DNA of 64,000 nucleotides from Macrostomum lignano (lineage: Eukaryota), in contig NIVC01000506.1 in the NCBI GenBank assembly GCA_002269645.1, positions 186,001-250,000 of the forward strand, written 5' to 3'. Shown here piece by piece: positions 4,132 to 64,000 of this stretch. Below the pieces are notes generated by a model. The model was given only the letters and a program-made list of their open reading frames with translations, ran no database searches and was not told where the DNA came from. The translations under genes and the position numbers were made by a program. How positions within the stretch are numbered: the stretch's first letter is position 1; each line of letters starts with the position of its first letter.

Positions 4132-4368
4132 GCTAGCCGTCATCAAGTTAGTATACAAAAGTACAAGTATATATAATAAATGCAAGTATACAAAAGTACA
4201 AATATGTACTTGTAAATTATAAAACTAGGGCAGCTTAGTTAATACTGGCTGGCAAACTGAGTGGACCAGGTTTTTGGATGGTGAAAAATTGAAACACTTG
4301 CACATGCCGATACTTTGTTGGCTACAAATTGCGGTCATTGTTTTCTCCGCTGCACTCGCAGGCTCGTC

Positions 4369-20286: not shown

Positions 20287-20643
20287 CTTACATGGCCTTT
20301 ACCAGCACTTTCACAAATCTGAAGCATCAGCAAAAATCTTACATGGCCTTTATCAGCACTTTCACAAATCTGAAGCATCAGCAAAAATCTTACATGGCCT
20401 TTACCAGCACTTTCACAAATCTGAAGCATCAGCAAAAATCTTACATGGCCTTTACCAGCACTTTCACAAATCTGAAGCATCAGCAAAAATCTTACATTGC
20501 CTTTACCAGCACTTTCACAAATCTGAAGCATCAGCAAAAATCTTACATGGCCTTTACCAGCACTTTCACAAATCTGAAGCATCAGCAAAAATCTTACATG
20601 GCCTTTACCAGCACTTTCACAAATCTGAAGCATCAGCAAAAAT
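20287..20643. repeat. 51-bp minisatellite, 7 copies, starting about 145 nt downstream of the copy 4 stop
   Basis: CTTACATGGCCTTTACCAGCACTTTCACAAATCTGAAGCATCAGCAAAAAT repeated. Confidence 0.95.
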
Positions 20644-23449: not shown

Positions 23450-32030
<8,581 letters not shown>

Positions 32031-37400: not shown

Positions 37401-39035
37401 CTCATGTGTAGTAATGGGTTCTCATAGATTCTTATGTGTAGTAATGGGTTCTCATAGATAGATTCTTATGTGTAGTAATGGGTTCTCATAGATTCTTATG
37501 TGTAGTAATGGGTTCTCATAGATTCTTATGTGTAGTAATGGGTTCTCATAGATTCTTATGTGTAGAAATGGGTTCTCATAGATAGATTCTTATGTGTAGA
37601 AATGGGTTCTCATAGATAGATTCTTATGTGTAGTAATGGGTTCTCATAGATTATCATGTGTAGTAATGGGTTCTCATAGATAGATTCTTATGTGTAGTAA
37701 TGGGTTCTCATAGATTCTTATGTGTAGTAATGGGTTCTCATAGATAGATTCTTATGTGTAGAAATGGGTTCTCATAGATAGATTCTTATGTGTAGAAATG
37801 GGTTCTCATAGATAGATTCTTATGTGTAGTAATGGGTTCTCATAGATAGATTCTTATGTGTAGAAATGGGTTCTCATAGATAGATTCTTATGTGTAGAAA
37901 TGGGTTCTCATAGATAGATTCTTATGTGTAGTAATGGGTTTTCATAGATAGATTCTTATGTGTAGTAATGGGTTCTCATAGATTATCATGTGTAGTAATG
38001 GGTTCTCATAGATAGATTCTTATGTGTAGTAATGGGTTCTCATAGATTCTTATGTGTAGTAATGGGTTCTCATAGATAGATTCTTATGTGTAGAAATGGG
38101 TTCTCATAGATAGATTCTTATGTGTAGAAATGGGTTCTCATAGATAGATTCTTATGTGTAGTAATGGGTTCTCATAGATTATCATGTGTAGTAATGGGTT
38201 CTCATAGATAGATTCTTATGTGTAGTAATGGGTTCTCATAGATTCTTATGTGTAGTAATGGGTTCTCATAGATAGATTCTTATGTGTAGAAATGGGTTCT
38301 CATAGATAGATTCTTATGTGTAGAAATGGGTTCTCATAGATAGATTCTTATGTGTAGTAATGGGTTCTCATAGATTCTTATGTGTAGAAATGGGTTCTCA
38401 TAGATAGATTCTTATGTGTAGAAATGGGTTCTCATAGATAGATTCTTATGTGTAGAAATGGGTTCTCATAGATAGATTCTTATGTGTAGAAATGGGTTCT
38501 CATAGATAGATTCTTATGTGTAGTAATGGGTTCTTATAGATAGATTCTTATGTGTAGAAATGGGTTCTCATAGATAGATTCTTATGTGTAGAAATGGGTT
38601 CTCATAGATAGATTTTTATGTGTAGAAATGGGTTCTCATAGATAGATTCTTATGTGTAGAAATGGGTTCTCATAGATAGATTCTTATGTGTAGTAATGGG
38701 TTCTCATAGATAGATTCTTATGTGTAGAAATGGGTTCTCATAGATAGATTCTTATGTGTAGTAATGGGTTCTCATAGATTATCATGTGTAGTAATGGGTT
38801 CTCATAGATAGATTCTTATGTGTAGAAATGGGTTCTCATAGATAGATTCTTATGTGTAGTAATGGGTTCTCATAGATTATCATGTGTAGTAATGGGTTCT
38901 CATAGATAGATTCTCATGTGTAGTAATGGGTTCTCATAGATTCTTATGTGTAGTAATGGGTTCTCATAGATAGATTCTTATGTGTAGTAATGGGTTCTCA
39001 TAGATAGATTCTCATGTGTAGTAATGGGTTCTCAT
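34440..39035. repeat. 4.6-kb satellite of 34-bp (AATGGGTTCTCATAGATAGATTCTTATGTGTAG[T/A]) and 30-bp variant units
   Basis: Direct reading. Variants differ by one TAGA, TAGT/TAGA and TCTT/TATC. Confidence 0.98.
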
Positions 39036-39320
39036 AGGACATTCCTTTGAAACTAAGAAAGTTTTAAATAGTATTGGCGAGTTTTCTTTATCTTTTTAAT
39101 GATTTCAGAAATCGACCTTATGCTACTACTTGAAGCAGCAGGAAGCGGAAAATGAGCAAAGCACAAAAGCTACAAAGACATTTTCTTCCAACAGTGAATT
39201 CACACTGGAATTCACTCGGCCCAATCTCAGAGACCTGCTTTTGCCAAATTTATTCTCAATCAGCATGCAGTCAACTCAGAGAGTCAAACAGAGAGCTGAG
39301 AGTCAGCTCAGTCAGACATG

Positions 39321-39893
39321 TCAATCATCGCTGGCTAGCACTGTGGATTTCTCGCTAACATAGACGCCGTCCAAGAATTTTCGGATGTCCTTGTTCTTCA
39401 CACAGCAGCACTGCTGGATCAGAGCGGCCGAGTGGCTGACCGCCTCGATGTCGTTGCCATCGAGCTGGATCTCGTCCTTCACGCCAGTCTGGGAGACGGT
39501 CACCCCGCGCAGCATGTTCACCGTCCGGTTGTTCTTCTCGCCGAGGAAGTTGCGAATCTCGATGGAGTCGCCGGCCTTGCTGATGACCATGTTGATGGGG
39601 AAGTGGGCGTACACGGACTTCATCTTGTAGCGGAAGCCGTACGTGACGCCCTTGATCATGTTGCGCACGTGGGTGATGACGGTGCGCACCGCGGCCAGCT
39701 CCTTGTGCACGCCGAACCACTTCTCCACCGTGAGGGTGCGGCCGTTGGGGGACACCTTGATGTCCAGGGACAGGTGACGGAACGAGCGCGACAGGGCGCC
39801 GCGCTTGCCTTTGACGCGGAGGACGCGGGAGCGGCTCTCCACGGTGACTCCCTCGGGGATCTTCATGCTGAGCGAGGACTTGATCACCTTCAT
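39321..39893 (-). CDS. RPL9: 60S ribosomal protein L9 (uL6), 190 aa, uninterrupted CDS
   Basis: [83 protein letters not shown] at 39254-39249 downstream of the stop. Confidence 0.98.
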
Positions 39894-42059: not shown

Positions 42060-45000
42060 TCACAGCGGTGCGGGCAGCAGACAGTGGCGCAGCAGCAGGC
42101 AGGCCAGCAGGCTAGCGCTGTCGGTACCGCCGCCGACTGTCATCGGGGAGGCGCCGCCGCTGAGCCAGACGCAGCCGGATTCGGCGAAGGCGCGGGCAGC
42201 GTGGCGCAGAAGGAGCCGCGTCAAGCTGGGCTGGAGGCGCCGGCCGTTCAGGCTGATGCTGAGCATGCCGGGGTAGCGGGCGCTCGCCTCCACCTGCCAG
42301 GTTGGAAAGACAAGAAAATTCGATTGAAGCAAAACAGCAAATACAGGGGTTTCCCTAGTTGGGATAGGGGATTTCCCTAGTTGGGATAGGGGGTTTCCCT
42401 TGTTGGAATAGGGGGTTTCCCTAGTTGGGATAGGGGGTTTCCCTAGTTGGGATAGGGGGTTTCCCTAGTTGGGATAGGGGGTTTCCCTAGTTGGGATAGG
42501 GGGTTTCCCTAGTTGGGATAGGGGGTTTCCCTAGTTGGAATAGGGGATTTCCATAGTTGAGATAGGGGATTTCCATAGTTGAGATAGGGGACTTCCATAG
42601 CTGAGATAGGGGGTTTCCCTAGTTAGGATAGGGGGTTCCCTAGTTGAGATAGGGGGTTTCCATAGTCGAGATACGGGGTTTCCCTAGTTGGGATAGGGGA
42701 TTTCTATAGTTGGGATGGGGGATTTCCATAGTTGAGATAGGAGATTTCCATAGTTAGGATAAAGGATTTCCATAGTTGGGATGGGGGATTTCCATAGTTA
42801 GGATAAAGGATTTCCATAGTTGAGATAGGAGATTTCCATAGTAAGGATAAAGGATTTCCATAGTTGGGATAGGAGATTTCCATAGTTGGGATAAGGGATT
42901 TCCATAGTTGGGATAGGAGATTTCCATAGTTGGGATAAGGGATTTCCATAGTTGGGATAGGAGATTTCCATAGTTGGGATAAGGGATTTCCATAGTTGGG
43001 ATAGGAGATTTCCATAGTTGGGATAGGGGGTTTCCCTAGTTGGAATAGGGAGTTTCCCTAGTTGGGATAGGGGATTTCCATAGTTGAGATAGGGGATTTC
43101 CAAAGTTGAGATAGGGGATTTCCATAGTCGAGATAGGAGGTTTCCATAGTCGAGATAGGGGATTTCCATAGTTGAGATAGGGGATTTCCATGGTTGAGAT
43201 AGGAGATTTCCATAGTTGTGATAGGAGATTTCCATAGTAGAGATAGGGGATTTCCATAGTTGAGATAGGGGATTTCCATAGTCGAGATAGGGGGTTTCCC
43301 TAGTTGGGATAGGGGGTTTCCCTAGTTGGGATAGGGGATTTCTATAGTTGGGATGGGGGATTTCCATAGTTGAGATAGGAGATTTCCATAGTTGGGATAG
43401 GAGATTTCCATAGTTGGGATAGGAGATTTCCATAGTCGAGATAGGGGGTTTCCATAGTCGAGATAGGGGATTTCCATAGTTGAGATAGGGGGTTTCCATA
43501 GTCGAGATACGGGGTTTCCCTAGTTGGGATAGGGGATTTCTATAGTTGGGATGGGGGATTTCCATAGTTGAGATAGGAGATTTCTATAGTTAGGATAAGG
43601 GATTTCCATAGTTGGGATAGGGAATTTCCATAGTTGAGATAGGAGATTTCCATAGTTGGGATAGGAGATTTCCATAGTTGGGATAGGAGATTTCCATAGT
43701 CGAGATAGGGGGTTTCCATAGTCGAGATAGGGGATTTCCATAGTTGAGATAGGGGGTTTCCATAGTCGAGATACGGGGTTTCCCTAGTTGGGATAGGGGA
43801 TTTCTATAGTTGGGATGGGGGATTTCCATAGTTGAGATAGGAGATTTCTATAGTTAGGATAAGGGATTTCCATAGTTGGGATAGGAGATTTCCATAGTTG
43901 GGATAGGAGATTTCCATAGTTGGGATAGGGGATTTCCATAGTCGAGATAGGAGATTTCCATAGTTGAGATAGGGGGTTTCCATAGTCGAGATAGGGGATT
44001 TCCATAGTCGAGATAGGAGATTTCCATAGTTGAGATAGGGGGTTTCCATAATCGAGATAGGGGGTTTCTATAGTTGGGATGGGGGATTTCCATAGTTGAG
44101 ATAGGGGGTTTCCCTAGTTGGGATAGGGGGTTTCTATAGTTGGGATGGGGGATTTCCATAGTTGAGATAGGAGATTTCCATAGTTGGGATAGGAGATTTC
44201 CATAGTTGGGATAAGGGATTTCCATAGTTATTAGTTGGGATAGGGGATTTCCAAAGTATAGGGGGATTTCCATAGGATAGAGGGATTTCAATAGGATAGA
44301 GGGATTTCCATAGGATAGGGGATTTCCATAGAATAGGGGGATTTCCATAGGATAAGGGATTTCCATAGGATAGGGGATTTCCATAGTTTAGAAGGTGATT
44401 TCCATAGTTGGGATAGGGGATTTCCATAGTTATTAGTTGGGATAGGGGATTTCCATAGGATAGGGGGATTTCCATAGTTGGGTTGGTGTTGGATAGAATT
44501 CTTGTTTTTATTGTCGAATAGGGAGGGGACTTATTAGAAGAGTTTTAATTGCCACGGGGATTTATATTATCCCACCTGCAGCAGCTGCACCGACCGCATG
44601 CCACCGCCGCGCAGTCGAACAACGACAGGTGCCGAGCTGCGAGCCACCACCGTCAGGGAGCGTCGGGAGGCCGCCGCGGCGGCTGCGGCAGTCGAAGCGG
44701 CCACAGCGGCCGGGTCGGGCCGGCGCCGCCGATACCGCTGGATGCCACGGCTTTGGATTGCTGGGTAGCCGGGCAGCAGCCGGGGCAGCTGGTAGAGACC
44801 GGCCTGCAATGGCGGCAAATTAAAGTGGCGATGGCGTTGCTATGAACTTGTGCAAATTGACGGTTGACCAGGGAGTGATGATTCAGGGAGTGCAGAGTCA
44901 GGAAGTGATGATTTAGGGAGTGCAGAGTCAGGGAGTGCAGAGTCAGGGGGTGCAGAGTCAGGGGGTGCAGAGTCAGGGAGTGCAGAGTCAGGGAGTGCAG

Positions 45001-47319
45001 AGTCAGGGAGTGCAGAGTCAGGGAGTGCAGAGTCAGGGAGTGCAGAGTCAGGAAGTGATGATTTAGGGAGTGCAGAGTCAGGGAGTGCAGAGTCAGGGGG
45101 TGCAGAGTCAGGGGGTGCAGAGTCAGGGAGTGCAGAGTCAGGGGGTGCAGAGTCAGGGAGTGCAGAGTCAGGGAGTGCAGAGTCAGGGAGTGCAGATTAA
45201 ATATGCTGAGTTCCCCACTGACCTCAACGCTGGCCACCAGGCCTCCAGCGCTAACATCCTCATCGTCCACCTCATCATCGATGACGTCATCATCGTCCTC
45301 ATCTTCATCGGAGCTCAGGTCCTCGCTGAGTTCCTCCTCGTCTTCGTCCTCATCGTCTTCCTCGTCGCTGGTGTCGGGGGCCGCCCGGAACCGGCGGCAG
45401 ACGAAGTCCAGAGGCGAGTCAGCAGCGGAGGCAACCAGATCGCCGCCCGAGCCATCCAGAGCTGCCGCCTCTTCGAGCTGGGCGAGCAGGTCCTGCAGGC
45501 AGCAGTCCGAGGCCAGGCTGAGCGAGTCTGGCGACTCCGGCCTACCGCTGTCCACCAAGGCGGTGGAAGCGCCGGCTGCTGTCGCCGTCGCGTCGACCTC
45601 CTCGACATCCTCCGACAAGTCGGTGGCGGGCATGGCGGTGCCGTCCAGCAGCAGCCGGGGATAATCCACATCCGGGTGCGCGGCCCCATCAGCAGTCTGT
45701 GGCAGCAGCGGGTCGAACTCCGCCGGCTTCGCCGCATCCTCAGCTGCCGCCTGATCGCTGGAAGTCGTACAGAAGTCTGCTGTTGCTGAAGCATCTCCGT
45801 TCTCTTTGGGTGTCGCCTCGGAGTTCGTTGAAGCAGCGGCAGCAGTAGTATCTAGCGAGTTTTCCTCCATTTTAGTAGCCATTTTGCAGTCGCCAAGAGA
45901 GGCGGTCAGAATGTCCGCAGTGGAGGCTGGGGCAGTGGAATACGCGGCGGCGGACTCGTCCGTTTTCGGATCGGCCGCCAAGCGGTCCAAAGCGGCCAGG
46001 GCGGACACGGCGGCCGCCCCAGAGCCAGCGGCCTCGTCACTGCTCGGGTTCGAATCCGATGTAGCGGTGGCCCCGTCAGCCGACCCGGAGGCAGCCAGCG
46101 AGGGCGAGGGCTCGAAGCCGAGCGCCAGGGCGGCCTCGTGCTCCGCCCAGCCGTGATTCTTCTGAAAGGTGAACCCGTCAACTTCTTCGCCGCGCAGAGA
46201 CCTGCCGACATTCCTGATGAAGGTGGCCTGGTCAAGGCCGGACTCGAAGTAGCTGGACACCGGGTCGGAGATGTTGGGGTGGTACAGTAGAAACAGCAGG
46301 CCCTGCAGGCAGTCCTCGATGCCGAAGGTTCGATTCCATTCGTCGAATAGGTTGAGGCAGATGTTGTGCTCCAAGGTGAGGTCGGCATCGATGTTGGGGT
46401 GGTAAATGTCCGTCAGGCAGACCACGTCAGGCGCAGAGTCGGGATACTGCTCCGAGGCGTGAATCTGCGGGCGGGCAGCGGCAGGGCTTGGGCGTCACTT
46501 CTTGCGGGGGTCGGGGCGCACCGAAATGGGGCTTCAGCGTGCCGATGTGGGATCTCAGGGGGTGTTCAAGGCGCGATGTGGGATCTCAGGGGAGTCTTTA
46601 GGGTTCCGATGTGGGATCTCAGGGGGGTCTTCAGGGTTCCAATGTGGGATTTCTGAGTGTCTTCAAGGTGCCGATGTGGGATCTCAGAGTATCTTCAGGG
46701 TACCAATGTGGGATCTCAGGGTGTATTCAGGGAGCCGATGTGAGATCTCAGGGTGTCTTCAGGGTTCCGATGTGGGATCTCAAGGGGGGGGGCTTCAGGG
46801 TGCCGATGTGGAATCTCAGAGTGTCTTCAGGGTGCAGATATGGGATCTCAGAGTGTCTTCAGATTGCCGATATGGGATCTCAGGGGGGTCTTCAGGTGCC
46901 AATGTAGAGGGATCTCAGGGGGTCTTCAGGGTGCTGATGTGGGATCTCAGGGTGTCACCAGGGCTAAGCTTTTAAGCTTAAATTAAGATATGTGCCACAC
47001 TGGGTCTTCAGTAATGCCCAGAAATCATAAGGTAATATTTGGACGTCAAGAAAAAAGGGGCCGCTGCACATGAAACTCATCGCTAAAAATCTTTTTGTGG
47101 GCAGTTCAAAATACCCCATGCCATTAACAGCGAATGCGGCTTTACCCATACCTGGAATAAGAATTTGCCATGCTTGTAGGGCCCATTGTTAGGCGCCAGT
47201 TCAACAATAAAGCAGTTCAGGTTGTCGGCATCATAGTCCCGGATGCTGGCCTGTCCACTGAATTTCTTGTCTATTGACTTGATCAGCCTGTTGAATTCTT
47301 TCACAAACCTGGAGGACAT
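42060..47319 (-). CDS. Ubiquitin-conjugating (E2) fold protein most like NEDD8 E2 Ubc12/UBE2M, with a long acidic low-complexity extension. Exons 47319-47152, 46464-45223, 44803-44576, 42293-42060 (about 623 aa)
   Basis: GPYKHGKFLFQ|IHASEQYPDSAPDVVCLTDIYHPNID..NICLNLFDEW..LQGLLFLLYHPNISDP..FIRNVGRSLRG. All junctions are phase-0 GT-AG. Exons 1-2 are secure; exons 3-4 are inferred from splice sites and open frames only. Confidence 0.78.
42347..44485. repeat. 22-bp minisatellite (CCATAGTTGGGATAGG[A/G]GATTT)n, 2.1 kb, E2 gene intron 3
   Basis: Direct reading. Confidence 0.96.
44882..45195. repeat. 15-bp minisatellite (TCAGGGAGTGCAGAG)n, E2 gene intron 2
   Basis: Direct reading. Confidence 0.95.
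46540..46955. repeat. ~32-bp degenerate minisatellite (GATGTGGGATCTCAGGG..TCTTCAGGGT)n, E2 gene intron 1
   Basis: Direct reading. Confidence 0.9.
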
Positions 47320-53491: not shown

Positions 53492-56400
53492 ATGCAGGCC
53501 CAACGCTACAGGCCGGCCTCCGCGTCGCCCTACCGAAGCCCCGGCGCCGCATTCTACGGCTCAACTGGCCGGCTCAGCTCGCTGGACAGGCGCGGCTATC
53601 GCAGCCCCGACAGAGGCGGCCTCATCGACCGCGGCATCAGGTTGGCTTGGCTGTGCAATTGGGGCTGACATAGGGACAGGCTGGGGGCTGGGAGAAGTAG
53701 GGAGAGACTGGGAGAAGTAGAAATGTAGAAGAAGTAGAGAAGTAGAGACTGCGAGAATGGGAGAGGTAGAAATCGACTGGGAGAAGTAGAGAGAGACTGG
53801 GAGAAGTAGGGAGAGACTGGCAGAATTAGAGAGCGAGACTGTGAGAAGTAGAGAGACTGGGAGAAGTAGAGAGAGACTGGGAGAAGTAGAGAGCGAGACT
53901 GGGAGAAGTAGGGAGAGACTGGGAGAAGTAGGGAGAGACTGGCAGAAGTAGAGAGAGACTGAGAGAAGTAGAGAGCGAGACTAGGAGAAGTAGAGAGAGA
54001 CTGGGAGAAGTAGAGAGCGAGACTGGGAGAAGTAGAGAGAAACTATGAGAAGTAGAGAGAGACTGGGAGAAGCAGAGAGCGAGACTGGGAGAGGTAGAGA
54101 TAGACTGGGAGAAGTAGAGAGAGACTGGGAGAAGTAGGGAGAGACTGGCAGAATTAGAGAGCGAGACTGTGAGAAGTAGAGAGACTGGGAGAAGTAGAGA
54201 GAGACTGGGAGAAGTAGAGAGTGAGACTGGGAGAAGTAGAGAGAGACTGGGAGAAGTAGAGAGCGAGACTGGGAGAAGTAGGGAGAGACTGGCAGAACGG
54301 CTTATGTATCACCGCACCGAATCAAACTTGGCAGTTCTACAACCCAAGTTATCTCAGTTCGTGATAATTTCCTCGATTCCAACTTTTACTTTTCTAGCAA
54401 TTGCATTTTTCTGCTTTTTCTATCAGCCGCCCCTGTTTACCGGTGCGCGTTTGCCTGTCTCACCAGTTGAGTACTCGTGTTTGAGCACTCCAATCTACAG
54501 CGGCGCGTGCGGTGGGCTGCTGAGCGCTTTTGAGAGCTGCCCCCGCCTGCGTACCACGCATGTTGCGGCAGTCTCTCGGCAAGCAGAGAGACTGGGGGGG
54601 GGGAGAAGCTTCAGCTGCATCAATTTCTTTCCGTCTTTCCGTCGCCCGAAATTTAGAAAATCTCCGTCTCACTGTGCTCAGCCCTGTCGCTTTGCAGTTT
54701 CTCTCTGGCCTGAGAGCTGCTCGCTGCTGGCATTCTTGGCTTTTATGTGCTCACCGGGTTTTTATCTGGCATTCTTGTGCGCACTTGAAAGCAGCCAAGC
54801 TCTTCAGCAGCGAGTAGTCACGAAATAGTTAACACCGGGGCTTGTGAGGCGTCATGCACTTGCGACTCTGACAGATTCCTGTTTAACATAAAGTTTTATT
54901 TTATCTCAGTCTCTGCTCCTTTTATTCTAAATGATTGCTGGTTTATGTTGCAGTTTTTTATTTGTTGCAGAGAAGACACCGAGGCAGTGCGCATTGGTCT
55001 GTTGGTCCCTTTGGCGTGTAGGGCTTAGGAAGTTCAGGCTGACTTTCGTCTCAACGGGTGACCCCTGTCCTACAGGTGACTCCCCCTGTCCTACAGGTGA
55101 CTTCCCCCTGTCCTACAAGTGAGTTCCCCTGTCCTACAGGTGACTTCCCCTCTCCTACAGGTGACTTCCCCTCTCCTACAGGTGAATTCCCCCTGTCCTA
55201 CAAGTGACTCCCCTCTCCTACAGGTGACTCCCTCTGTGACTCCCCTGATCTTATAGGCGACTTCCCCTGTCCTACAGGTGACTTCCCCTGTCCTACAGGT
55301 GACTCCCCCTGTCCTACAGGTGACTCCCTCTGTGACTCCCCTGATCTTATAGGTGACTTCCCCTGTCCTACAGGGTGACTCCCCCTGTCCTACAGGTGAC
55401 TCCCCCTGTCCTACAGGTGACTTCCCCTGTCCTACAGGTGACTCCCCCTCTCCTACAGGTGACTTCCCCTGTCCTACAGGTGAATTCCCCCTGTCCTACA
55501 GGTGACTTCCCCTCTCCTACAGGTGACTCCCCCTCTCCTACAGGTGACTTCCCCTCTCCTACAGGTGACACCCCTCTCCTACAGGTGACTCCCCCTCTCC
55601 TACAGGTGACTTCCCCTGTCCTACAGGTGACTCCCTCTGTGACTCCCCCGATCTTATAGGCGACTTCCCCTGTCCTACAGGTGACTCTCCCTGTCCTACA
55701 GGTGACTCTTCCTGTCCTACAGGTGACTCCCCCTGTCCTACAGGTGACTTCCCCTGTCCTACAGGTGACTCCCCTGTCCCACTAGTGACCCATTTTTTAC
55801 AGGTGACCTTCCTTCCTGCGTTACAAGAAAAAAAATAGGGTCTGACATAAATTAAGAAAACTTGATTCTAAAATGTGCAAAACAGCCTTCCTTAGACTTC
55901 CTCATCCGCATCGCCTCATCTGTGCCACCCAGCTTCACAGTGAACAGCCTGCGGGAGTCGCGGCAGGAGCTGGCCTCCATAGCCAACGATATTGATGAAT
56001 ATCTCGACGAGAAGGAGGCTGCGGCGGATGAGGCCACTTCCGAGAAGCTCCGCTACCGGCAGCAGCGGCTGTCGCGCTCGCCTTCGCCCTCGCCGTCGGC
56101 GAAGCAGCGGCGCACGTCGCCGAGATTCGCTCCCGCCTCCGCCGACTGGAATTACGGGGACACGGCGCCGCAGGTGAGGCTGCGATTGAGAAGATGGGGA
56201 TAAGGGGCTCCATGAGGGGACAAGAAGCGTCATGAGGGAATAAGGGACGCCATGAGGGAATAAGAGACGCCATGAGGGGATAAGGAGCGCCATGAGGGGA
56301 TAAAGGGGCGCCATGAGGGAATAAGGGGCGCCATGAGGGAATAAGGGGCGCCATGAGGCGATAAGGGGCGCCATGAAGGGATAAGGGGCGCCATGCAAGG

Positions 56401-59400
56401 GATAAGGGGCGCCAGAAGGGGATAACGGGCGCCATGAAGGGGATAAGGGGCACCATGATGGGATAAGGGGCGCCATGAAAGGGATAAAGGGGCGTCATGA
56501 GGGAATAAGGGGTACCATGAGGGGATAAATGGCGCAATGAGGGGATATGGGGCGCCATCAGGGGACAAGAAGCGCCATGAGGGGATAAGGGGCGCCATGA
56601 GGGGATAAGGGGCGCCATGAAGGGGATAAAGGGCGCCATGAGGGGATAAGGGGCGCCATGAGGGGATAAGGGGCGCCATGAGGGGATAAGGGGCGCCATG
56701 AGCTGCTTATCGAGTCAAGAAGCTCACAGCAGTTCTGCTTATAAAAATTTGAATTCATTTTCAAGCAAGTTTTGGTTTCAAACTTTCAGCCCAGCTCTCA
56801 TCACCCCGGCTACGGCAGCCAGCCGGGGTACCTGCCTCCGTCGGCCCCGCCGCCTCCGCCTCCGCCGCCGCTGCCACCGCAACCGACGCCGCGAGCGGAA
56901 CCTTTGAAAAATGAAAATGAACGACTTCGACTGGAGATCAAGGAGCTCAACGACTCGTGAGTGACCGCCATGGTGTGACTTTTGCCTCGCATCGGCTGAT
57001 GCACAAGGGTTCCTCGGACAAGGGGATAGATAGCATTATAGCATTATAGCATTATAGCAATAGAATGGATTGCTAATCTACTCCTCAGACATGGGGATAG
57101 AATGGATTGCTAATCTACTCCTCAGACATGGGGATAGAATGGATTGCTAATCTACTCCTCAGACATGGGGATAGAATGGATTGCTAATCTACTCCTTGCT
57201 CTTTTACCTTGGGGTTGCGATAGGGGCCTCGCGGCCTATTCGCGGCGCCTGCGCCCCCCGTCAGTAGTAAGTAAGTAAGTAAGTAATCTACTCCTCAGAC
57301 ATGGGGAATAGAATGGATTGCTAATCTACTCCACTCGAACTACCACTCCAGGCTGAACAACCAGACCAAGAAGCTGGACCAGCTGGCACCGCTGGCCAAG
57401 AGTCTGGAGCAGGAGCTGGCGGACAGTCAGGATCAGACAGACCGGCTCGGTGACGCCCTGGCTGAGAGGGACCAGCAGAACAAGCAGCTGGGCAATGTGA
57501 GCTGGTGATGGTGCAGTGTGAGCTGGTGATGGGCAGTGTGAGCTGGTGATGGTGCAGTGTGAGCTGGTTATGGGACAGTGTGAACCGGTGATAAAGAGCA
57601 TATTTAATATTTCAAGAACCGATGGCTTCCAGGAGCTGCAGCTGGCGAAGCGCCAGACGGAGGAGTACCGCAGGCAGATGGAATCGCTGACCCGCGCCCT
57701 GAAGGAGAAAGATGCTGCGCTGGGCGCGAAGCAATCGGAGCTTGACTGTGCCAAAAATGTGAGCTCACTTCATCATAAACATCTCAAATAAGTTGTTGCT
57801 TAATTCGACATCTAGATATCCCCAATTCGACATCTAGACATCCCCAATTCGACATCTAGACATCCCAATTCAACATCTAGATATCCCCAGTTCAACATCT
57901 AGACATCCCCAATTCGACATCTAGACATCCCCAATTCGACATCTAGACATCCCCAATTCGACATCTAGACATCCCCAATTCGACATCTAGACATCCCCAA
58001 TTCGACATCTAGATATCCCCAATTCGACATCTAGACATCCCCAATTCGACATCTAGACATCCCCAATTCGACATCTAGACATCCCCAATTCAACATCTAG
58101 ATATCCCCAATTCGACATCTAGACATCCCCAATTCGACATCTAGACATCCCCAATTCGACATCTAGACATCCCCAATTCAACATCTAGACATCCCCAATT
58201 CGACATCTAGACATCCCCAATTCAACATCTAGATATCCCCAATTCGACATCTAGACATTCCCAATTCGTCAGTAGCCACACTCAGCCGCGTCTCCAGCTT
58301 CCCCGCTCGTCGAAAATCCCCAGGAGGCAGCCCAGCAGCAGTCCGAGGCTGATTCGGCCAGGGACGAGGCCGCTCACCTGAAGAGCCTCAACGCTGTGCT
58401 CTGCAAGGAGTGCCAGGAGCTCATCGGCCACATGGCCAGGCAGCAGGAGGTGGGTTATTGGTTGGATTTGTTGGCAGTGTACATTGTGTTAGACAGGTGT
58501 TAGATGCCTGTTAGACAAAATCTAGAACTGTTAGACCAAATCTAGATCTGTTTAGACATGTTAGACATGCATATTAGATACCTGTTAGACAGATTCAGAT
58601 CTGTTAGACATACTGGACAGCTGTTAGACAGAATATAGAACTGTTAGACATGCCGGACACCTGTTAGACACAGCCTGGTCCCGTCGAACATCCGCAGGAA
58701 ACTGCAGGCCTCCGCGCCCAGCTGCAGGCGCTCCGCCGCGAGCGTGATCACGTGACCTCGGAGCTGGCAACCGCGGCGGCCGAGCGCGACCGGATGAAGG
58801 CCTCGCTGCTGGGCATCGACAGCTCCGATTCGCGCAGTCCAGCCGAGGTCATGGCCGACGACCTTCGACAGGAGCTGCTGCTGGCCCGCCAGGAGGCCGA
58901 CCGGCTGCAGGCGCGGTGCGCCGGCCTTGACGAGGAGCGTGCCGGGCTGCAGGAGGCGCACGACAGCCTGCTGGGCGAGCTGGGGGCGCTGCGCCGCGCC
59001 CTGGCCACCTTCCAGGAGACCGTGGCTGGCGAGAACCGCGCCATCGAAGAGGAGAACCGGCGGCTTGCGCGCGAAAACGAGGAACTGAAGCGGGGGAAAA
59101 GCCGGCCAGCAGGCAGGTCGAGGAGCGGCGAGGACGGCCTGGGAGAAAGCGATGAGGAGTGAGTTCGGGTCGGGTGGGGTCAGACTGGCTCGAAGTAGGC
59201 TAGATTGGGTGAAGGAAGTGAGTCAGAATAGGTAACGGCGAGTCGGGAAATATTCGAGTGAGTCATGCGCTTCACAGAATGTGTTAGACTATGATCAAAG
59301 TGAGTCAGAGTGCGTCAGAATGGGTCAGAGTGAGTCAGACTGGGTCAGAGTGAGTCAGACTGGGTCAGAGTGAGTCAGACTGAGTCAGAGTGAGTCAGAA

Positions 59401-62400
59401 TGGGTCATAGTGAGTCAGACTGGGTCAGAGTGAGTCAGACTGAGTCAGAGTGAGTCAGGCTGGGTTAGAGTAAGTCAGCCTGGGTTAGAGTGAGTCAGAC
59501 TGAGTCAGAGTGAGTCAGACTGGGTCAGAGTGAGTCAGGCTGGGTTAGAGTGAGTCAGAATGGGTCAGAGTGAGTCAGAATGGGTCAGAGTGAGTCAGAC
59601 TGGGTCAGAGTGAGTCAGACTTGGTCAGAGTGAGTCAGACTGGGTCAGAGTGAGTCAGACTGGGTCATAGTGAGTCAGAATGGGTCAGAGTGAGTCAGGC
59701 TGGGTCAGAGTGAGTCAGACTGGGTCAGAGTGAGTCAGACTGGGTTAGAGTGAGTCAGAATGGGTCAGAGTGAGTCAGACTGGGTCAGAGTGAGTCAGAC
59801 TGGGTCAGAGTGAGTCAGGCTGGGTTAGAGTGAGTCAGACTGAGTCAGAGTGAGTCAGGCTGGGTTAGAGTAAGTCAGCCTGGGTTAGAGTGAGTCAGAA
59901 TGGGTCAGAGTGAGCCAGACTGGGTCAGAGTGAGTCAGACTGGGTCAGAGTGAGCCGGACAATTCTTTCGCAGACTGGACAACCGGTTGCAAAGCCAGTT
60001 AGACGAGCTCCGACATCAGAACCGGCAGCTGGCCCAGGAGAATGAGCAGCTGAGACGACCTGCTGCATCCGGCTACCGGCTGCCAAGTGAGTGCTGACCA
60101 CACCTTGTCAACCCCCTTGTGCACCTCCTGATATCCCGTTACATTCACTTTGCTTATTGAAGACTTGGGAGCTGCAGCCTCAGCCCCGGGCCTCAGCCGC
60201 GATCTGCAGGACGTCCAGACCAGGCTTGCGGAATCGCGCGACCTCCTGGGTCGTCAGCAGTCGCTCATCGACCAGCTGGAGGCCGGGTTCGATTCGCCTC
60301 CGCAGCAGCGGAAGCGACCATCGACAGCAGCCGGAATCGGGACGGCGGCAGCGGCAGCCTCATCGGCGACGTCTCCGGAGGTAGCAGCGCTGCGGCAGGA
60401 GATCGGCCGCCTGCGCCAGCTGGCCACTGAGAGCCAGCAGCGACGGCCGGAGGTTGACGATCTTCTAAGGCGGCTGTTAGAGGACAGGTAAAAGTCACTT
60501 TAACTCATATTTTCCTCAAACGAGATCCCAATAAAGACTCCCAACTCTGCTCTCACCGACAGCCGCGGCAAAGACGAGGCGATTCGCGCCCTGTCCGCTC
60601 AAGTCGATGCTCTCAAAGCGTCAAGACACTCGCAGCAGCCGTCCGGTGCTGACGATGGGGTCAGCCAGGACGATGGTCTGAGGAATCGAGTCCGAGACCT
60701 GCTGACCGACTGGGGCCGCTTTCAAGGCGACCTGTCCGGCCAGTTGCGCGTCGAGTCGGATGACCGACGGCAGGCCATCCGCGAGCTGGACAGCCGCTTC
60801 CAGGCGCTCGCCAATGAGCTGGAGGCGCTGCGCCGGGGCCGCGGAAGCGCCAGAAACGCCCAGTCCCAGACCCAGACGCCTTGGTTGAGACGACCGCCCG
60901 ATCCGCAGCAGCAGCAACAACAACAGCAACAACAACAGGCTTCGTCCAACGCGGTCTCTTCAGACGACGGCCTGCACGAACGGCGGCCGTCGTCAAAGAA
61001 GCCGACGCACCTTGGCGAGGCCAAAGCTCGCTCGGATTCTTTAAACTTGCATCGCCCGCCAGCTGAGCAGCCGTACGGCACGGCTGGCGGGCCAAGCGTT
61101 GCCAATAGCAACGCAAACACCGCAGCCGCAGCAGCTGCCAGCGACAGCACTAAAAATATCCACACGCAGACGTCTCCACTGCCCCAAGCCTGCCCCGAGC
61201 ATTTTTTCAATAGTTTGCCTTACTTCGAAGGCCCCCGACTCTACGATGAGGTCTCCGATGCCGAGGGCCTGCTGAGCGACGGCAAAGGACGCCACACAAC
61301 GGTTGAAAGCGGCGCCTTTCATCAGCAGCCGCACCTGCAGGGGGAGCCGTCTGGCACATCGGAATCCGCTAATTTGAACCTGCGCTCATGCCCGCAAGAC
61401 CAAGACCGAGCTGATGGGCAGTGCAGCAGCATGTGGGCCAGGCTCAGGTCGGCGAATGCAGGAAACGAAGCCCCTACAGCGCAGTCGCAGCGACAGCGAG
61501 CCAAGAGACAGTCCAGACGGAGCTTCGCCAGCTCAGCCAGCCCATCGCTGCCGGGAAGTCCGCGCCAGTCCGGCCTTCGAGACTCAGCCGGGTGGCACAG
61601 TGAGCGGTCCTTGAGCGGCAGCCCAGCGCGGAGACCGTCGTCTCGTAGCAAAGCACCATGGGACCGTCACGAAGAACGCAACGATTCCGACGAGACTCTG
61701 TCTGGTTCACCGCGACGATCTCGACGCGACAGCGGAACTCGGCGGCGCAAAGTTCCAAAGCTGAACCTGGGCAGTGAGGTCGGGAGCCACGGGCGGCCTC
61801 TCAGCGCAGAAGAAGCAGAAAGTCGAAGCCGAGCAGAGCAGAGCCGGTTGGAGGCTTCAAAGGCTCCAGTTGACAACCTTGGCTTCCGTGTGCCCAGAGG
61901 CGAGGCTAGACATCCCAGCTTCGAATCCGACAGCGGCAAGAGCGCCCGGTTCTCGTCAGACAGACAGGCGCGCGAAAAGCAGCCACGCTCAAGTCTTCGA
62001 ACCTACAGTCAGTCGGAAGCCAGCGTTGGCGAGTCCACCGGCACGGTGAGGCCCACAGGGGCCAATCGACAAGGCGAGTTGGCTAATGAGCCAGCCCCAG
62101 GACGCGGTGTGCGGAGACGCGAAGGTGCTGGATCCGGCAGTGAGGAATCGAGAAGCTCCCGGAGACCGAGCGAACTTGGATACAATAGACGCCCTGATGA
62201 TGATGCTTTCAGTGACAGAGACAAAACCGGGAGCCCAGACAGGCATCCTGACAAACCTAGCCATGCGAATTCCAGCGACAGGACTCTAGATGCGCGGGAT
62301 TCCCAGTCAGCAAGTGCCAGGGACAAGACTCTGTATAAGCAGCGCAACGATTCTCATTCTCCCAGTAACAGGGATCAAAGTCAAGGTGAAAGATTTGTCG

Positions 62401-64000
62401 ATTCTCAGCCAACGAGTGCCAGAGACAGAAGTTGGGATCAGCAATTCGACCAGCTTGGCAGGACCAATTCTCAGGCCGGCAGCAAAGATGGACGCCGCAC
62501 AGGGGAATTCGAAAATAAATCAAATGCTGCGATTAGTAGAGATGGATACCCGGATCAACGATATGACGGTATAGCAGTGAGTAACAGGGACAGAAGTCCA
62601 GACGGACGGTATGACGGCTCTCAGCCTCCCAGCACTAGAGACAGAAGCCGAGACAGACGATATGACGGGTCTCAACCTCCCAGCGCGAGAGACAGAAGCC
62701 GAGACAGACGGTATGGCGGCTCTCAGCCTCCCAGCACTAGAGACAGAAGCCGAGACAGACGGTATGACGGCTCTCAGCCTCCGAGCACTACAGACAGAAG
62801 CCGAGACAGACGGTATGACGAGTCTCAGCCTCCCAGCACTACAGACAGAAGCCGAGACAGACGTTATGACGGCTCTCAGCCTCCCAGTGCGAGAGACAGA
62901 AGCCGAGAGAGACACAAAGACGACTCTCATCCACCCAGTGCAAGAGACAGAAGCCGAGACAGACGTTATGACGGCTCTCAGCCTCCCAGTGCGAGAGACA
63001 AAAGCCGAGAGAGACGTTATGACGGCTCTCAGCCTCCCAGCGCGAGAGACAAAAGCCGAGAGAGACGTTATGACGGCTCTCAGCCTCCCAGTGCGAGAGA
63101 CAAAAGCCGAGAGAGACGTTATGACGGCTCTCAGCCTCCCAGCACTACAGACAGAAGCCGAGACAGACGGTATGACGGCTCTCTGCATCCTTATGCGAGA
63201 GACGGAAGTCGAGACAGAAGCCGAGACAGACGATATGACGGCTCTCAACCTCCCAGTGCGAGAGACAGAAGCCGAGACAGACGATATGACGGCTCTCAAC
63301 CTCCCAGTGCCAGAGACAGAAGCCGAGAGAGACACAAAGACGACTCTCATCTACCCAGTGCGAGAGACAGAAGCCGAGACAGACGTTATGACGGCTCTCA
63401 GCCTCCCAGCGCGAGAGACAGAAGCCGAGACAGACGTTATGACGGCTCTCAGCCTCCCAGCGCAAGAGACAGAAGCCGAGAGAGACACAAAGACGACTCT
63501 CATCTACCCAGTGCGAGAGACAGAAGCCGAGACAGACGTTATGACGGCTCTCAGCCTCCCAGCGCGAGAGACAGAAGCCGAGACAGACGTTATGACGGCT
63601 CTCAGCCTCCCAGCGCGAGAGACAGAAGCCAAGAGAGAGACAAAGACGACTCTCATTCATTCAATAAGAGACACAAAAGCCAAGACAGAAGGTATGACGG
63701 CTCTCAGCCTTACAGCGTGAGAGACAGAAGCCTAGAAAGAGACAAAGACGACTCTCATCCATCCAATAAGAGAGATAGCAGCCGAGACAAACGGTATGAC
63801 GCCTCTCAGCCTCCCAGCGCGAGAGACAGAAGCCGAGAGAGACACAAAGACGCCTCTCAGCCTCCCAGCACGAGAGACAGAAGCCGAGACAGACGATATG
63901 ACGGGTCTCAGCCTCCCAGCGCAAGAGACAGAAGCCGAGACAGACGATATGACGGGTCTCAGCCTCCCAGCGCAAGAGACAGAAGCCGAGACAGACGTTA
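53492..64000 (+). CDS. Large coiled-coil / low-complexity protein of unknown identity, 3'-partial (over 1780 aa visible). Exons 53492-53640, 54971-54996, 55896-56173, 56790-56956, 57352-57496, 57633-57758, 58324-58449, 58698-59158, 59974-60086, 60163-60487, 60563->64000
   Basis: GT-AG junctions with matching phases throughout. Heptad-rich exons (ELQLAKRQTEEYRRQMESL, LRQELLLARQEADRLQ), poly-Pro and poly-Gln tracts. The final exon is open in one frame from 60564 to the window end. Exons 1-2 are less certain. Confidence 0.8.
53690..54295. repeat. GA-rich ~18-22-bp minisatellite (GAGAGACTGGGAGAAGTA)n, intron 1
   Basis: Direct reading. Confidence 0.92.
55045..55810. repeat. 21-22-bp minisatellite (TCCCCTGTCCTACAGGTGAC)n, intron 2
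   Basis: Direct reading, roughly 30-35 units. Confidence 0.95.
56195..56700. repeat. ~22-bp minisatellite (GGGATAAGGGGCGCCATGAGG)n, intron 3
   Basis: Direct reading. Confidence 0.93.
57060..57335. repeat. 37-bp minisatellite (ATGGGGATAGAATGGATTGCTAATCTACTCCTCAGAC)n, intron 4, interrupted by an insertion
   Basis: Direct reading. Confidence 0.92.
57197..57283 (+). mobile_element. 87-bp 5'-truncated non-LTR retroelement end with a (TAAG)n tail, RTE-like
   Basis: Flanked by a 12-bp duplication TAATCTACTCCT (57185-57196, 57284-57295) of the minisatellite unit. Ends GTAGTAAGTAAGTAAGTAAG. Confidence 0.65.
57497..57585. repeat. 20-21-bp repeat beginning exactly at the exon 5 donor (GTGAGCTGGTGATGG..CAGT), 4-5 copies
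   Basis: Direct reading. Confidence 0.88.
57805..58268. repeat. 22-bp minisatellite (TCGACATCTAGACATCCCCAAT)n, intron 6
   Basis: Direct reading. Confidence 0.95.
58490..58670. repeat. Degenerate TGTTAGAC-based repeat, intron 7
   Basis: About 10 TGTTAGA(C/T) motifs. Confidence 0.75.
59300..59955. repeat. 20-bp minisatellite (AGAGTGAGTCAGACTGGGTC)n, intron 8
   Basis: Direct reading, about 32 units. Confidence 0.95.
62590..64000 (+). repeat. Coding 51-bp tandem repeat encoding RDRSRDRRYDGSQPPS[A/T], with a variant RDRSRERHKDDSHPPSA
   Basis: In frame with the 60564 reading frame (codon starts at positions divisible by 3). No stops, and length variants preserve the frame. Confidence 0.88.

What the first reader, a model, noticed from the sequence alone, without database searches (positions are those of the whole stretch)
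60563..64000. Giant open exon missed by the ORF track, ending in a 17-aa Arg/Asp/Ser repeat domain
From the acceptor at 60562 one frame stays open for over 1140 codons to the window edge (frame checked at 61200, 62040, 62520 and 63999). It passes from coiled coil through poly-Q and Ser/Arg-rich disorder into more than 25 repeats of RDRSRDRRYDGSQPPSA or RDRSRERHKDDSHPPSA. Length variants preserve the frame, implying selection on the peptide. Alternating R-D/R-S mixed-charge tracts with periodic Tyr and Ser resemble RS/RD domains that drive nuclear-speckle condensation and are kinase substrates (established). Fused to a long coiled coil, this suggests an undescribed scaffold or phase-separating protein (inference).
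Basis: partly seen in the sequence, partly recalled or inferred. Interest (0 to 1): 0.72.

Follow-up and report, generated by a model that had tools for sequence, protein, structure and literature searches.

The report
Giant flatworm exon with coding minisatellite
This is the start of a roughly 9.5-kb coding exon of an uncharacterised gene of the flatworm Macrostomum lignano, in which a 51-bp repeat encodes dozens of copies of a charged 17-residue unit; the gene is real and already in GenBank as a hypothetical protein, but its function is unknown.

Summary
The frame starting at 60564 (exon starts 60563, after an AG acceptor) has no stop for 1145 codons to the window edge. It ends in 27 full 17-aa units plus one in-frame 4-aa insertion.

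The window is Macrostomum lignano. This is exon 10 of a copy of BOX15_Mlig031120g1 (PAA74391.1, "hypothetical protein"). My 10-exon model, ATG at 53492, matches that protein with 14 substitutions and no indels over 1293 aa.

In the syntenic Mlig_3_7 copy (L001) the same frame runs 2667 codons. It passes through about 45 units and 1190 further codons, so the array is read through and is not a terminus.

The deposited proteins shorten or skip the array. The gaps in PAA74391.1 cannot be GT-AG introns, which points to repeat collapse. The other model's skips do look like gene-finder introns.

The protein has a heptad-periodic coiled coil (about aa 140-700) followed by a long tail predicted to be disordered. 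No Pfam domain was found, and the non-repeat part has no relatives outside this species.

The repeat only loosely resembles RS/RD domains. It fails the published thresholds for mixed-charge domains and RS domains. The proposed scaffold or condensate role remains inference. Interest is modest.

The parts
53492..53640 (+). Exon 1, with the start codon (MQAQRYRPASAS...); GT donor at 53641
   Evidence: ORF list and sequence. There is an in-frame upstream stop at 53454. The spliced model equals the N-terminus of PAA74391.1.
55933..56173 (+). Exon 2 (disordered N-terminal region)
   Evidence: AG/GT boundaries, correct phase and a match to P0001.
56790..56956 (+). Exon 3 (poly-Pro, then start of the coiled coil: NENERLRLEIKELNDS)
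   Evidence: A weak, sub-threshold Pfam CC4_CEP85 match begins here.
57352..57496 (+). Exon 4 (coiled coil)
57633..57758 (+). Exon 5 (coiled coil). The acceptor was corrected using the P0001 junction QLGN|ELQL.
58324..58449 (+). Exon 6 (coiled coil)
58698..59158 (+). Exon 7 (coiled coil, 461 nt)
   Evidence: Heptad periodicity is shown.
59974..60086 (+). Exon 8 (coiled coil)
60163..60487 (+). Exon 9 (coiled coil); donor GTAAAA at 60488
60488..60562 (+). Intron 9 (75 nt, GT...AG)
   Evidence: The junction LLEDS|RGKDEA is present in P0001.
60563..64000 (+). Exon 10, the giant exon, cut by the window edge. It is phase 1, with 1145 open codons from 60564.
   Evidence: The homologous exon in L001 is open for 2667 codons and spans about 9467 nt to its donor.
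60564..60860 (+). End of the coiled coil (about 99 aa, predicted helical)
   Evidence: AF2 gives helices at 2-20, 32-60 and 65-99 with pLDDT 66-85.
60903..60938 (+). Poly-Q, 12 residues (23 in the sister copy)
60939..62585 (+). Ser/Arg/Ala/Gly-rich region predicted to be disordered. It contains an NLS-like RRRKVPK and, from about 62210, degenerate ancestral repeat units.
   Evidence: AF2 pLDDT is below 50 except for a short helix at exon residues 415-432. No Pfam match.
62586..64000 (+). 51-bp coding minisatellite: 27 full 17-aa units, one RDGS insertion (63198-63209) and a partial unit. By analogy with L001 it continues for about 12 more units.
   Evidence: AF2 finds no structure, mean pLDDT 44.

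Best explanation
What it is (shown). The region is the first 3.4 kb of exon 10 of a Macrostomum lignano gene, a near-identical genomic copy of BOX15_Mlig031120g1. The gene has about 12 exons. Exon 10 is about 9.5 kb in the sister copy.

The product is a protein of about 3300 to more than 4300 aa. It has a short disordered N-terminus, a heptad-periodic coiled coil of about 550 aa, and a tail of more than 2500 aa that is predicted to be disordered and has no recognisable domain.

How the array arose (inferred). Inside that tail a 51-bp minisatellite expanded from older, now degenerate copies that still flank it on both sides. Expansion was probably by slippage or unequal exchange in a genome saturated with minisatellites. 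It persists in a coding exon because its period is 3 x 17 and it sits in a region that tolerates length changes. Copy number and unit order already differ between two genomic copies whose unique sequence differs by only 0.9%.

What it does (inferred). Each unit is a 10-residue arginine-rich mixed-charge block (RDRSRDRRYD) followed by a 7-residue uncharged Pro/Ser/Gln spacer (GSQPPSA). Coiled-coil oligomerisation would multiply the 40-50 blocks per chain. My best guess is a multivalent, probably phospho-regulated, weakly cohesive or RNA-binding scaffold domain, whose bulk properties matter more than exact copy number.

The confidence below applies to the structural account (real translated exon, coding minisatellite, orphan coiled-coil plus disordered-tail protein). 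The functional step alone I put at about 0.3.
For: Exon and frame:
- 1145 open codons, with P about 5e-10 for the non-repeat part.
- All nine introns are GT-AG. The spliced model has 1763 aa and no stops. It matches PAA74391.1 with 14 substitutions and no indels over 1293 aa.

Organism and deposited records:
- Macrostomum lignano, PAA74391.1 and A0A1I8FYU8, on NIVC01000952.1.
- That annotation is built from RNA-seq and de novo transcripts (PMC5730564). This is indirect evidence of expression.

The array is read through:
- In L001 the frame is open for 2667 codons across the whole array and about 1190 codons beyond it.
- PAA74391.1 joins the 5' flank, some units and the 3' flank in one frame. 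Its four gaps against the genome (36, 408, 12 and 1848 nt) are all in frame and cannot be GT-AG introns.

Array dynamics:
- The two copies share landmark units and differ by block duplications.
- The unique parts differ at 18 of 2025 nt.
- 31% of the window is tandem arrays, and 15% of the genome is simple and tandem repeats.

Peptide-level constraint:
- 61% of possible synonymous changes are realised against 33% of nonsynonymous, p = 0.019. There are no stops in 71 units.

Architecture:
- Heptad periodicity in aa 141-520 beats all 500 shuffles.
- AF2 predicts helix for the first 99 residues of the exon and pLDDT below 50 elsewhere. The array has mean pLDDT 44.
- The array is 25.7% R, 17.6% S, 17.0% D and 10.2% P, with K only 2.8%.
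- Arginine-rich mixed-charge tracts drive condensation and speckle entry in human cells (bioRxiv 10.1101/771592).
Against: - No direct RNA or peptide data were examined here. Short-read transcripts cannot show that the full array is in the mRNA.
- dN/dS between the two copies is uninformative: 6 synonymous and 12 nonsynonymous differences, omega 0.63.
- The within-array test is only p = 0.019, and the units are not independent of one another.
- The array fails the formal thresholds for mixed-charge and RS domains.
- There is no RNA-binding or other domain.
- Localisation is unknown. A long coiled coil is as typical of cytoskeletal, centrosomal or Golgi scaffolds as of nuclear bodies.
- A net charge of +2 per unit could favour the nucleolus over speckles (PMC9324279).
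- The AF2 runs used a single sequence, so low pLDDT is weak evidence of disorder.
- The L001 copy carries a 1-nt difference that truncates it. At least one copy may therefore be decaying, or misassembled.
Confidence: 0.85

Rival explanations
1. Neutral coding minisatellite. The array is translated but has no function of its own. It is a recent, tolerated expansion in a permissive disordered tail of a genome that generates minisatellites everywhere. Only 'no stop, no frameshift' is selected.
For: - Many units are identical at the DNA level, and unit order differs between copies that are 99.1% identical elsewhere.
- 29 arrays cover 31% of the window.
- dN/dS between copies is not below 1 with any confidence.
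- The non-repeat region has no homologue outside the species.
Against: - Synonymous variants are over-represented among the realised changes (p = 0.019).
- Degenerate units on both sides keep the R-D-x-S...D-x-S-x-P-x-S pattern and the frame over hundreds of codons. This suggests long persistence as peptide.
Confidence: 0.35
2. The array is not in the mature mRNA. It is removed as an intron, as in the A0A1I8FYU8 model, so the repeat peptide is never made.
For: - P0002 jumps from RDRSPDGR directly to TNDGDERY.
- The implied intron has a GT donor in the first unit (CG|GTATGA) and an AG acceptor at L001 22351.
Against: - The same model also removes 321 in-frame nucleotides (window 60750-61070) that the transcript-derived PAA74391.1 retains. 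P0002 therefore behaves like a gene-finder avoiding low-complexity sequence.
- PAA74391.1 contains repeat units and the 450 nt between the array and P0002's acceptor as coding sequence.
- The frame is open through the whole 'intron' for about 940 codons. That is not expected of an intron: other introns of this gene carry 20-22-bp arrays and stops.
Confidence: 0.07
3. A cytoskeletal or centrosomal coiled-coil scaffold (CEP85-like or similar). On this reading the charged tail is a spacer or an electrostatic binder of microtubules or membranes, not a nuclear-body domain.
For: - About 550 aa of heptad-periodic coiled coil.
- The best Pfam lead is CC4_CEP85, with E = 2.2e-4 and 22 bits.
- Other weak hits are to Taxilin, ATG16 and SOGA coiled coils.
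- UniRef names P0002 a 'CAP-Gly domain-containing protein'.
Against: - All Pfam hits are below their curated cut-offs and lie in generic coiled coil.
- No CAP-Gly domain was found in P0001 or P0002 at E <= 0.1, nor at E <= 10 in the separately scanned C-terminal and N-terminal pieces.
- PDB sequence search gives nothing below E = 0.07.
- The exon carries an NLS-like RRRKVPK.
Confidence: 0.2
4. Decaying duplicate or pseudogene. The window copy is one of several polyploid copies and is not itself functional.
For: - The M. lignano DV1 assembly holds 180 Mb of duplicated blocks that are at least 95% identical.
- L001 has a 1-nt difference that truncates the frame at 25477, relative to the reading in P0002.
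- Nonsynonymous differences outnumber synonymous ones between the copies, 12 to 6.
Against: - The window copy has no stop or frameshift in 1763 modelled codons, and all its splice sites are intact.
- P0002 matches the window residue for residue at the sites where L001 differs, and continues to a proper C-terminus.
Confidence: 0.08

Closest known systems
[quoted passage not shown]
   Same: Alternating R/D with interspersed Ser. Arginine, not lysine, is the basic residue (25.7% against 2.8%). The region is predicted to be disordered, is long and multivalent, and has a slightly positive net charge.
   Different: The charged blocks are diluted by a 7-residue uncharged spacer, so FCR is 0.47-0.53 instead of at least 0.7. 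There is no RRM or other RNA-binding module. The array is a strict 17-aa tandem repeat. It is fused to a long coiled coil. Localisation is untested.
SRRM2 and SON, the giant disordered nuclear-speckle scaffolds (PMC7671692)
   Same: Very large proteins made mostly of Ser/Arg-rich disorder. From my own knowledge, that disorder is encoded largely by a single giant exon, and SON contains tandem peptide repeats.
   Different: No sequence homology. No runs of RS dipeptides: the longest alternating RS/SR stretch here is the 3-residue RSR. No conserved N-terminal cwf21-type domain. A coiled coil is present instead.
Coding minisatellites (VNTRs) such as the MUC1 60-bp repeat or involucrin repeats (my own knowledge)
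   Same: The period is a multiple of three, copy number changes rapidly between copies, degenerate units sit at the array edges, and the array lies in one large exon.
   Different: Intracellular-looking protein with no signal peptide visible at the N-terminus. The composition is charged, not mucin-like or glutamine-rich.
PAA74391.1 (BOX15_Mlig031120g1) and A0A1I8FYU8, the deposited M. lignano models of this gene
   Same: Same gene family and locus type. Identical apart from 14 substitutions over the first 1293 residues.
   Different: Both deposited proteins lack most or all of the array. PAA74391.1 keeps about 3 units, through non-canonical in-frame gaps. A0A1I8FYU8 skips the array and a further 107 codons. 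The genomic reading frame implies about 750 more residues.

Membership tests
Mixed-charge domain (Greig et al. definition) | A 60-aa window with fraction of charged residues >= 0.7 | tested here: not met
   The maximum FCR is 0.53 in the window exon and 0.58 in L001, with 0 qualifying windows. The criterion is read from the paper.
Mixed-charge domain (Greig et al. definition) | Positive-to-negative charge ratio within 1:0.7-1.3 | tested here: inconclusive
   The array has 134 positive and 90 negative residues, a ratio of 0.67, just outside the range. If all Ser are counted as phosphorylated, 30 windows pass both criteria, but phosphorylation is unknown.
Mixed-charge domain (Greig et al. definition) | Arginine rather than lysine supplies the positive charge (R-MCD subclass) | tested here: met
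   R is 25.7% and K is 2.8% of the array.
Mixed-charge domain (Greig et al. definition) | Condensation in vitro and incorporation into nuclear speckles | not testable with these tools
   Needs expression of the tagged array.
RS domain / SR-related protein | A 60-aa window with S+R fraction >= 0.6 | tested here: not met
   The maximum is 0.50.
RS domain / SR-related protein | Runs of consecutive RS/SR dipeptides | tested here: not met
   There are 48 RS/SR dipeptides in 471 aa, but the longest alternating run is the 3-residue RSR.
RS domain / SR-related protein | Associated RNA-recognition or splicing-factor domain | tested here: not met
   No Pfam family was found on any part of the protein.
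CEP85 family | CC4_CEP85 (PF24555) at or above its gathering score | tested here: not met
   22.0 bits against a cut-off of 27.3, E = 2.2e-4, in generic coiled coil. The hit is absent when the whole protein is scanned.
CAP-Gly domain protein (UniRef name of A0A1I8FYU8) | A CAP-Gly domain (Pfam CAP_GLY) | tested here: not met
   No match in P0001 or P0002 at E <= 0.1, nor at E <= 10 in the separately scanned C-terminal and N-terminal pieces. No GKNDG-type motif was found.
Coding minisatellite | Period divisible by 3, with one frame continuous through the array and both flanks | tested here: met
   The period is 51. In L001, 2667 codons are open across the array and both flanks. The window shows only the 5' flank.
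Coding minisatellite | Copy-number variation between alleles or copies that keeps the frame | tested here: met
   Upstream of the shared MNOP landmark units the window has 20 full units and L001 has 27. All differences are whole units or 12 nt.
Coding minisatellite | The array is present in mature mRNA and in the protein | tested here: inconclusive
   The transcript-derived PAA74391.1 contains units in frame with both flanks, but collapsed. No long-read or peptide data are available here.

The most novel reading that the evidence does not exclude
The array is a previously unrecognised kind of 'diluted' mixed-charge polymer. Strictly periodic arginine-rich blocks alternate with Pro/Ser/Gln spacers, carry one SQ site and one Tyr per unit, and are mounted on an oligomerising coiled coil. 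On this reading it nucleates a flatworm-specific, phospho-tunable condensate or nuclear body in an orphan protein of more than 4000 aa, and the rapidly changing copy number tunes that body's material properties.
Probability: 0.12. Interest if true: 0.65.

Novelty: new variant of a known kind. Interest (0 to 1): 0.3.

Why it matters
- Annotation. Both public protein models of this gene lack about 750 residues, because short-read transcript assembly and gene finders collapse or skip the coding minisatellite. In a genome with 15% simple and tandem repeats this error is probably widespread. Long-read cDNA would correct it.
- Biology. The locus is a natural example of a very long sticker-spacer, arginine-rich polymer on a coiled-coil base. 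It occurs in an organism where transgenesis exists, so the sequence rules for mixed-charge condensation could be tested outside mammalian cells.
- Caveat. The finding is otherwise ordinary for this genome, and no function has been shown.

Tried and rejected
- The search for homologous proteins, three searches: the non-repeat model, the array, and the low-complexity-free N-terminus plus coiled coil. None returned PAA74391.1, which is in that collection as a cluster representative and is about 99% identical to the query and identical to the query. These negatives are uninformative. Whether the coiled coil has relatives in other animals remains open.
The single job therefore went to the contiguous non-repeat part of exon 10, which found only the two M. 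lignano proteins.
- The look-up of encoding contigs found nothing for two window ORFs or for P0002.
- Pfam on every part and PDB sequence search gave nothing significant.
- Rfam and tRNA scans of the window found nothing.
- dN/dS between the two copies had too few differences to be useful.
- My first exon model was wrong in three places: the donor of exon 3, the acceptor of exon 5 and the first base of exon 1. I corrected it against P0001.
- The other 51-bp array, at 20287-20643, is unrelated AT-rich non-coding sequence.
- Literature searches for the locus tag and for a characterised homologue found nothing.

Full report
**1. Observation**

Translating from 60563 gives many stops. Translating from 60564 gives 1145 codons without a stop, up to the window edge. 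The exon begins at 60563 after cgacAG, and its first base completes a Ser codon begun in the previous exon.

In the 675 non-repeat codons (60564-62588) the other five frames hold 12-34 stops. The chance of no stop is about 5e-10 from base composition, and 0 of 20000 shuffles were stop-free.

TRF reports a 51-bp period with 27.5 copies at 62589-64000. My parse gives 27 complete 17-aa units from 62586, one in-frame 12-nt insertion (RDGS, 63198-63209) and a partial unit at the edge. The 23-nt core of the unit occurs 25 times in the window, against 0 expected.

The ORF lister leaves out ORFs that run off the source. That is why the 'ORF track' missed this exon. Other frames are also open inside the array, so the case for coding has to rest on the flanks.

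**2. Gene and organism**

Upstream exons with canonical GT-AG introns encode a coiled coil. The introns are packed with 20-22-bp minisatellites.

An exhaustive HMMER search of 1.84 billion representative proteins with the non-repeat part of the exon found only two proteins. Both are from Macrostomum lignano:
- PAA74391.1, "hypothetical protein BOX15_Mlig031120g1", 2517 aa.
- UniRef100_A0A1I8FYU8, 2507 aa.

PAA74391.1 lies on NIVC01000952.1 of assembly GCA_002269645.1. This is the Mlig_3_7 assembly. Its annotation was built from RNA-seq, StringTie/TACO and BLAT-mapped de novo transcripts (PMC5730564).

After I corrected three boundaries against that protein, the window gives a 10-exon model. 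The ATG is at 53492, all introns are GT-AG, and the product has 1763 residues with no stop. It differs from PAA74391.1 by 14 substitutions and no indels over the first 1293 residues.

**3. The 'next window', seen in the sister copy**

L001 is a syntenic copy, with 91-98% identity in introns and 99.1% in the unique part of exon 10. From the same acceptor, the frame in L001 is open for 2667 codons. These comprise 686 non-repeat codons, an array of 45 units with two RDGS insertions, and about 1190 further codons that include many degenerate units.

The array is therefore internal to the coding sequence. It is in frame with both flanks and bordered by its own decayed relatives.

Compared with the reading in A0A1I8FYU8, L001 lacks one base after ...ATFAN. 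Without that difference the exon would run to a GT donor at L001 26939, making it 9467 nt. It would be followed by a 1.7-kb exon and a short last exon ending ...NSKHQLELLQED*. The intact protein would then have roughly 4300 residues. I cannot tell whether the L001 difference is real or an assembly error.

**4. Why the deposited proteins lack the array**

PAA74391.1 differs from the L001 genomic frame by four in-frame gaps of 36 nt (in the poly-Q), 408, 12 and 1848 nt. None of them can be placed on GT...AG boundaries, even allowing the gaps to slide. This is what collapsed short-read transcripts mapped back to the genome would produce. It is not splicing.

A0A1I8FYU8 skips the whole array, and also skips 321 nt at window 60750-61070. 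Both skips have GT...AG ends. However, PAA74391.1 retains the 321-nt stretch and the sequence just downstream of the array. I therefore read these as gene-finder introns.

Only long reads can show the full array in mRNA.

**5. Is the peptide selected?**

The single 12-nt insertion, and a period divisible by three, say little. Seven of the 29 arrays in this window have such a period.

Differences from the consensus fall 25, 39 and 77 on codon positions 1, 2 and 3, but the units are copies of each other. I therefore pooled the 71 units of both copies and counted each variant once. Of 36 possible synonymous single changes, 22 are realised. Of 117 nonsynonymous changes, 39 are realised (binomial p = 0.019). 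No unit carries a stop.

Between the two copies the unique part shows 6 synonymous and 12 nonsynonymous differences, omega 0.63, which is uninformative. Constraint on the peptide is therefore modestly supported, not demonstrated.

**6. Array dynamics**

Written as peptide types, the unit order is:
- Window: ABCDEFGBHHIJKBBLBBLBBMNOPQBB...
- L001: ABCBBCBDSKBGBHHGBCSKBLBBHHBTUMNOPVBGGWXYZabccde

The two share landmarks and differ by block duplications. Upstream of the shared MNOP landmark the window has 20 full units and L001 has 27. By analogy, the window's array continues for about 12 more units. The poly-Q is 12 residues here and 23 in L001.

Tandem arrays cover 31% of the window, and simple and tandem repeats make up 15% of the genome. 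The mechanism of origin is thus the ordinary one for this genome.

**7. Protein architecture**

Hydrophobic residues show strong 3.5-residue periodicity in aa 141-520 (0 of 500 shuffles reach it). The periodicity is weaker in aa 521-700 (7 of 500) and absent in the tail and in the array.

Single-sequence AF2 predicts helices for exon-10 residues 2-99 with pLDDT 66-85. Everything else is below 50, apart from a short helix at residues 415-432. The array has mean pLDDT 44 and no secondary structure.

No Pfam family reaches its cut-off on any part of the protein. The best lead is CC4_CEP85 at 22 bits against a cut-off of 27.3. PDB sequence searches are empty. The UniRef name 'CAP-Gly domain-containing protein' is not borne out.

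**8. Comparison with RS and RD domains**

The array is 25.7% R, 17.6% S, 17.0% D and 10.2% P. Its FCR is 0.48 and its net charge is +0.09 per residue.

Greig et al. define mixed-charge domains as 60-aa windows with FCR of at least 0.7 and balanced charge. They define RS domains as windows with S+R of at least 0.6. Here the maxima are 0.53 and 0.50, and no window qualifies. Thirty windows qualify only if every Ser is counted as phosphorylated. The longest alternating RS/SR run is RSR.

The unit is better described as a 10-residue R-rich mixed-charge block (FCR 0.8) followed by a 7-residue uncharged spacer. Arginine dominance matches the cohesive R-MCD class. The net positive charge could instead favour the nucleolus. 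Each unit also carries one SQ site (4.9 per 100 aa), one R-x-x-S, one S-x-x-D and one Tyr. From my own knowledge, these are the consensus motifs of PIKK, basophilic and CK2 kinases respectively; this is a lead, not a finding.

**9. Verdict**

The exon is real, and its size was if anything underestimated. It is not new to the databases, but it is misrepresented there.

The most likely account is a translated coding minisatellite in the disordered tail of an orphan coiled-coil protein. A pure 'tolerated expansion' is a serious rival to any specific function.

**10. Limits**

The three word-indexed homology searches failed for technical reasons. Homology of the coiled coil and of the C-terminal exons outside M. 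lignano was therefore not properly tested. I examined no expression, localisation or peptide data.

Noticed in passing
window 1-64000: Twenty-nine tandem arrays of at least 100 bp cover about 19.9 kb, or 31% of the window. The largest is a 34-bp unit repeated 140 times (34446-39037). Only 7 of the 29 have a period divisible by 3.
   Followed up: partly
window 396-1616, 4315-5265, 9657-10697, 18764-20143 (+): Four tandem, intronless paralogues of a DXD glycosyltransferase-like gene (Pfam Gly_transf_sug confirmed on the first and last). Their N-termini differ. The last one carries an in-frame 33-bp coding repeat at 18977-19087. The second and third ORFs are shorter and diverge from the others near the C-terminus, so they may be damaged.
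   Followed up: partly
window 13540-17628 (+): Ty3/Gypsy-type LTR retrotransposon interior. It has a gag-like ORF, then RT, RNase H and integrase domains split over three overlapping or adjacent ORFs in different frames. It is probably a degraded copy. LTRs were not sought.
   Followed up: no
window 25466-26491 (-): An exon encoding the transmembrane region of a family-C GPCR (Pfam 7tm_3, E = 1.6e-20). It runs directly into a 22-bp minisatellite that is open in several frames.
   Followed up: no
window 39321-39893 (-): An intronless 190-aa ribosomal protein uL6/RPL9 ORF (Pfam Ribosomal_L6, E = 5.6e-31). It sits between two large minisatellites.
   Followed up: no
window 44653-47319 (-): A gene encoding a ubiquitin-conjugating-enzyme domain (Pfam UQ_con). 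Its long ORF continues into an acidic tail and a 15-bp repeat (44869-45196, HSLTL...). The same region is syntenic in L001.
   Followed up: no
L001 about 25333 (NIVC01000952.1), beyond the window edge: The sister copy lacks one base after the codons for ...ATFAN, relative to the reading in A0A1I8FYU8. This gives a stop at 25477 and removes about 1100 C-terminal residues. It is either a real truncating allele or copy, or an assembly indel.
   Followed up: partly
window 60903-60938; L001 17816-17851: The poly-Q tract is 12 residues in the window copy and 23 in L001. PAA74391.1 has 12 although it is annotated on L001. This is another sign that the deposited protein follows a transcript rather than the genome.
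   Followed up: yes
P0002 (UniRef100_A0A1I8FYU8): It is named 'CAP-Gly domain-containing protein', but no CAP-Gly domain is detectable by Pfam or by motif search. The origin of the name is unexplained.
   Followed up: partly
tool behaviour: The word-indexed protein search returned no hit for queries 99-100% identical to a protein that is a cluster representative in the same collection. Negative results from that tool for coiled-coil or low-complexity queries should not be trusted.
   Followed up: yes
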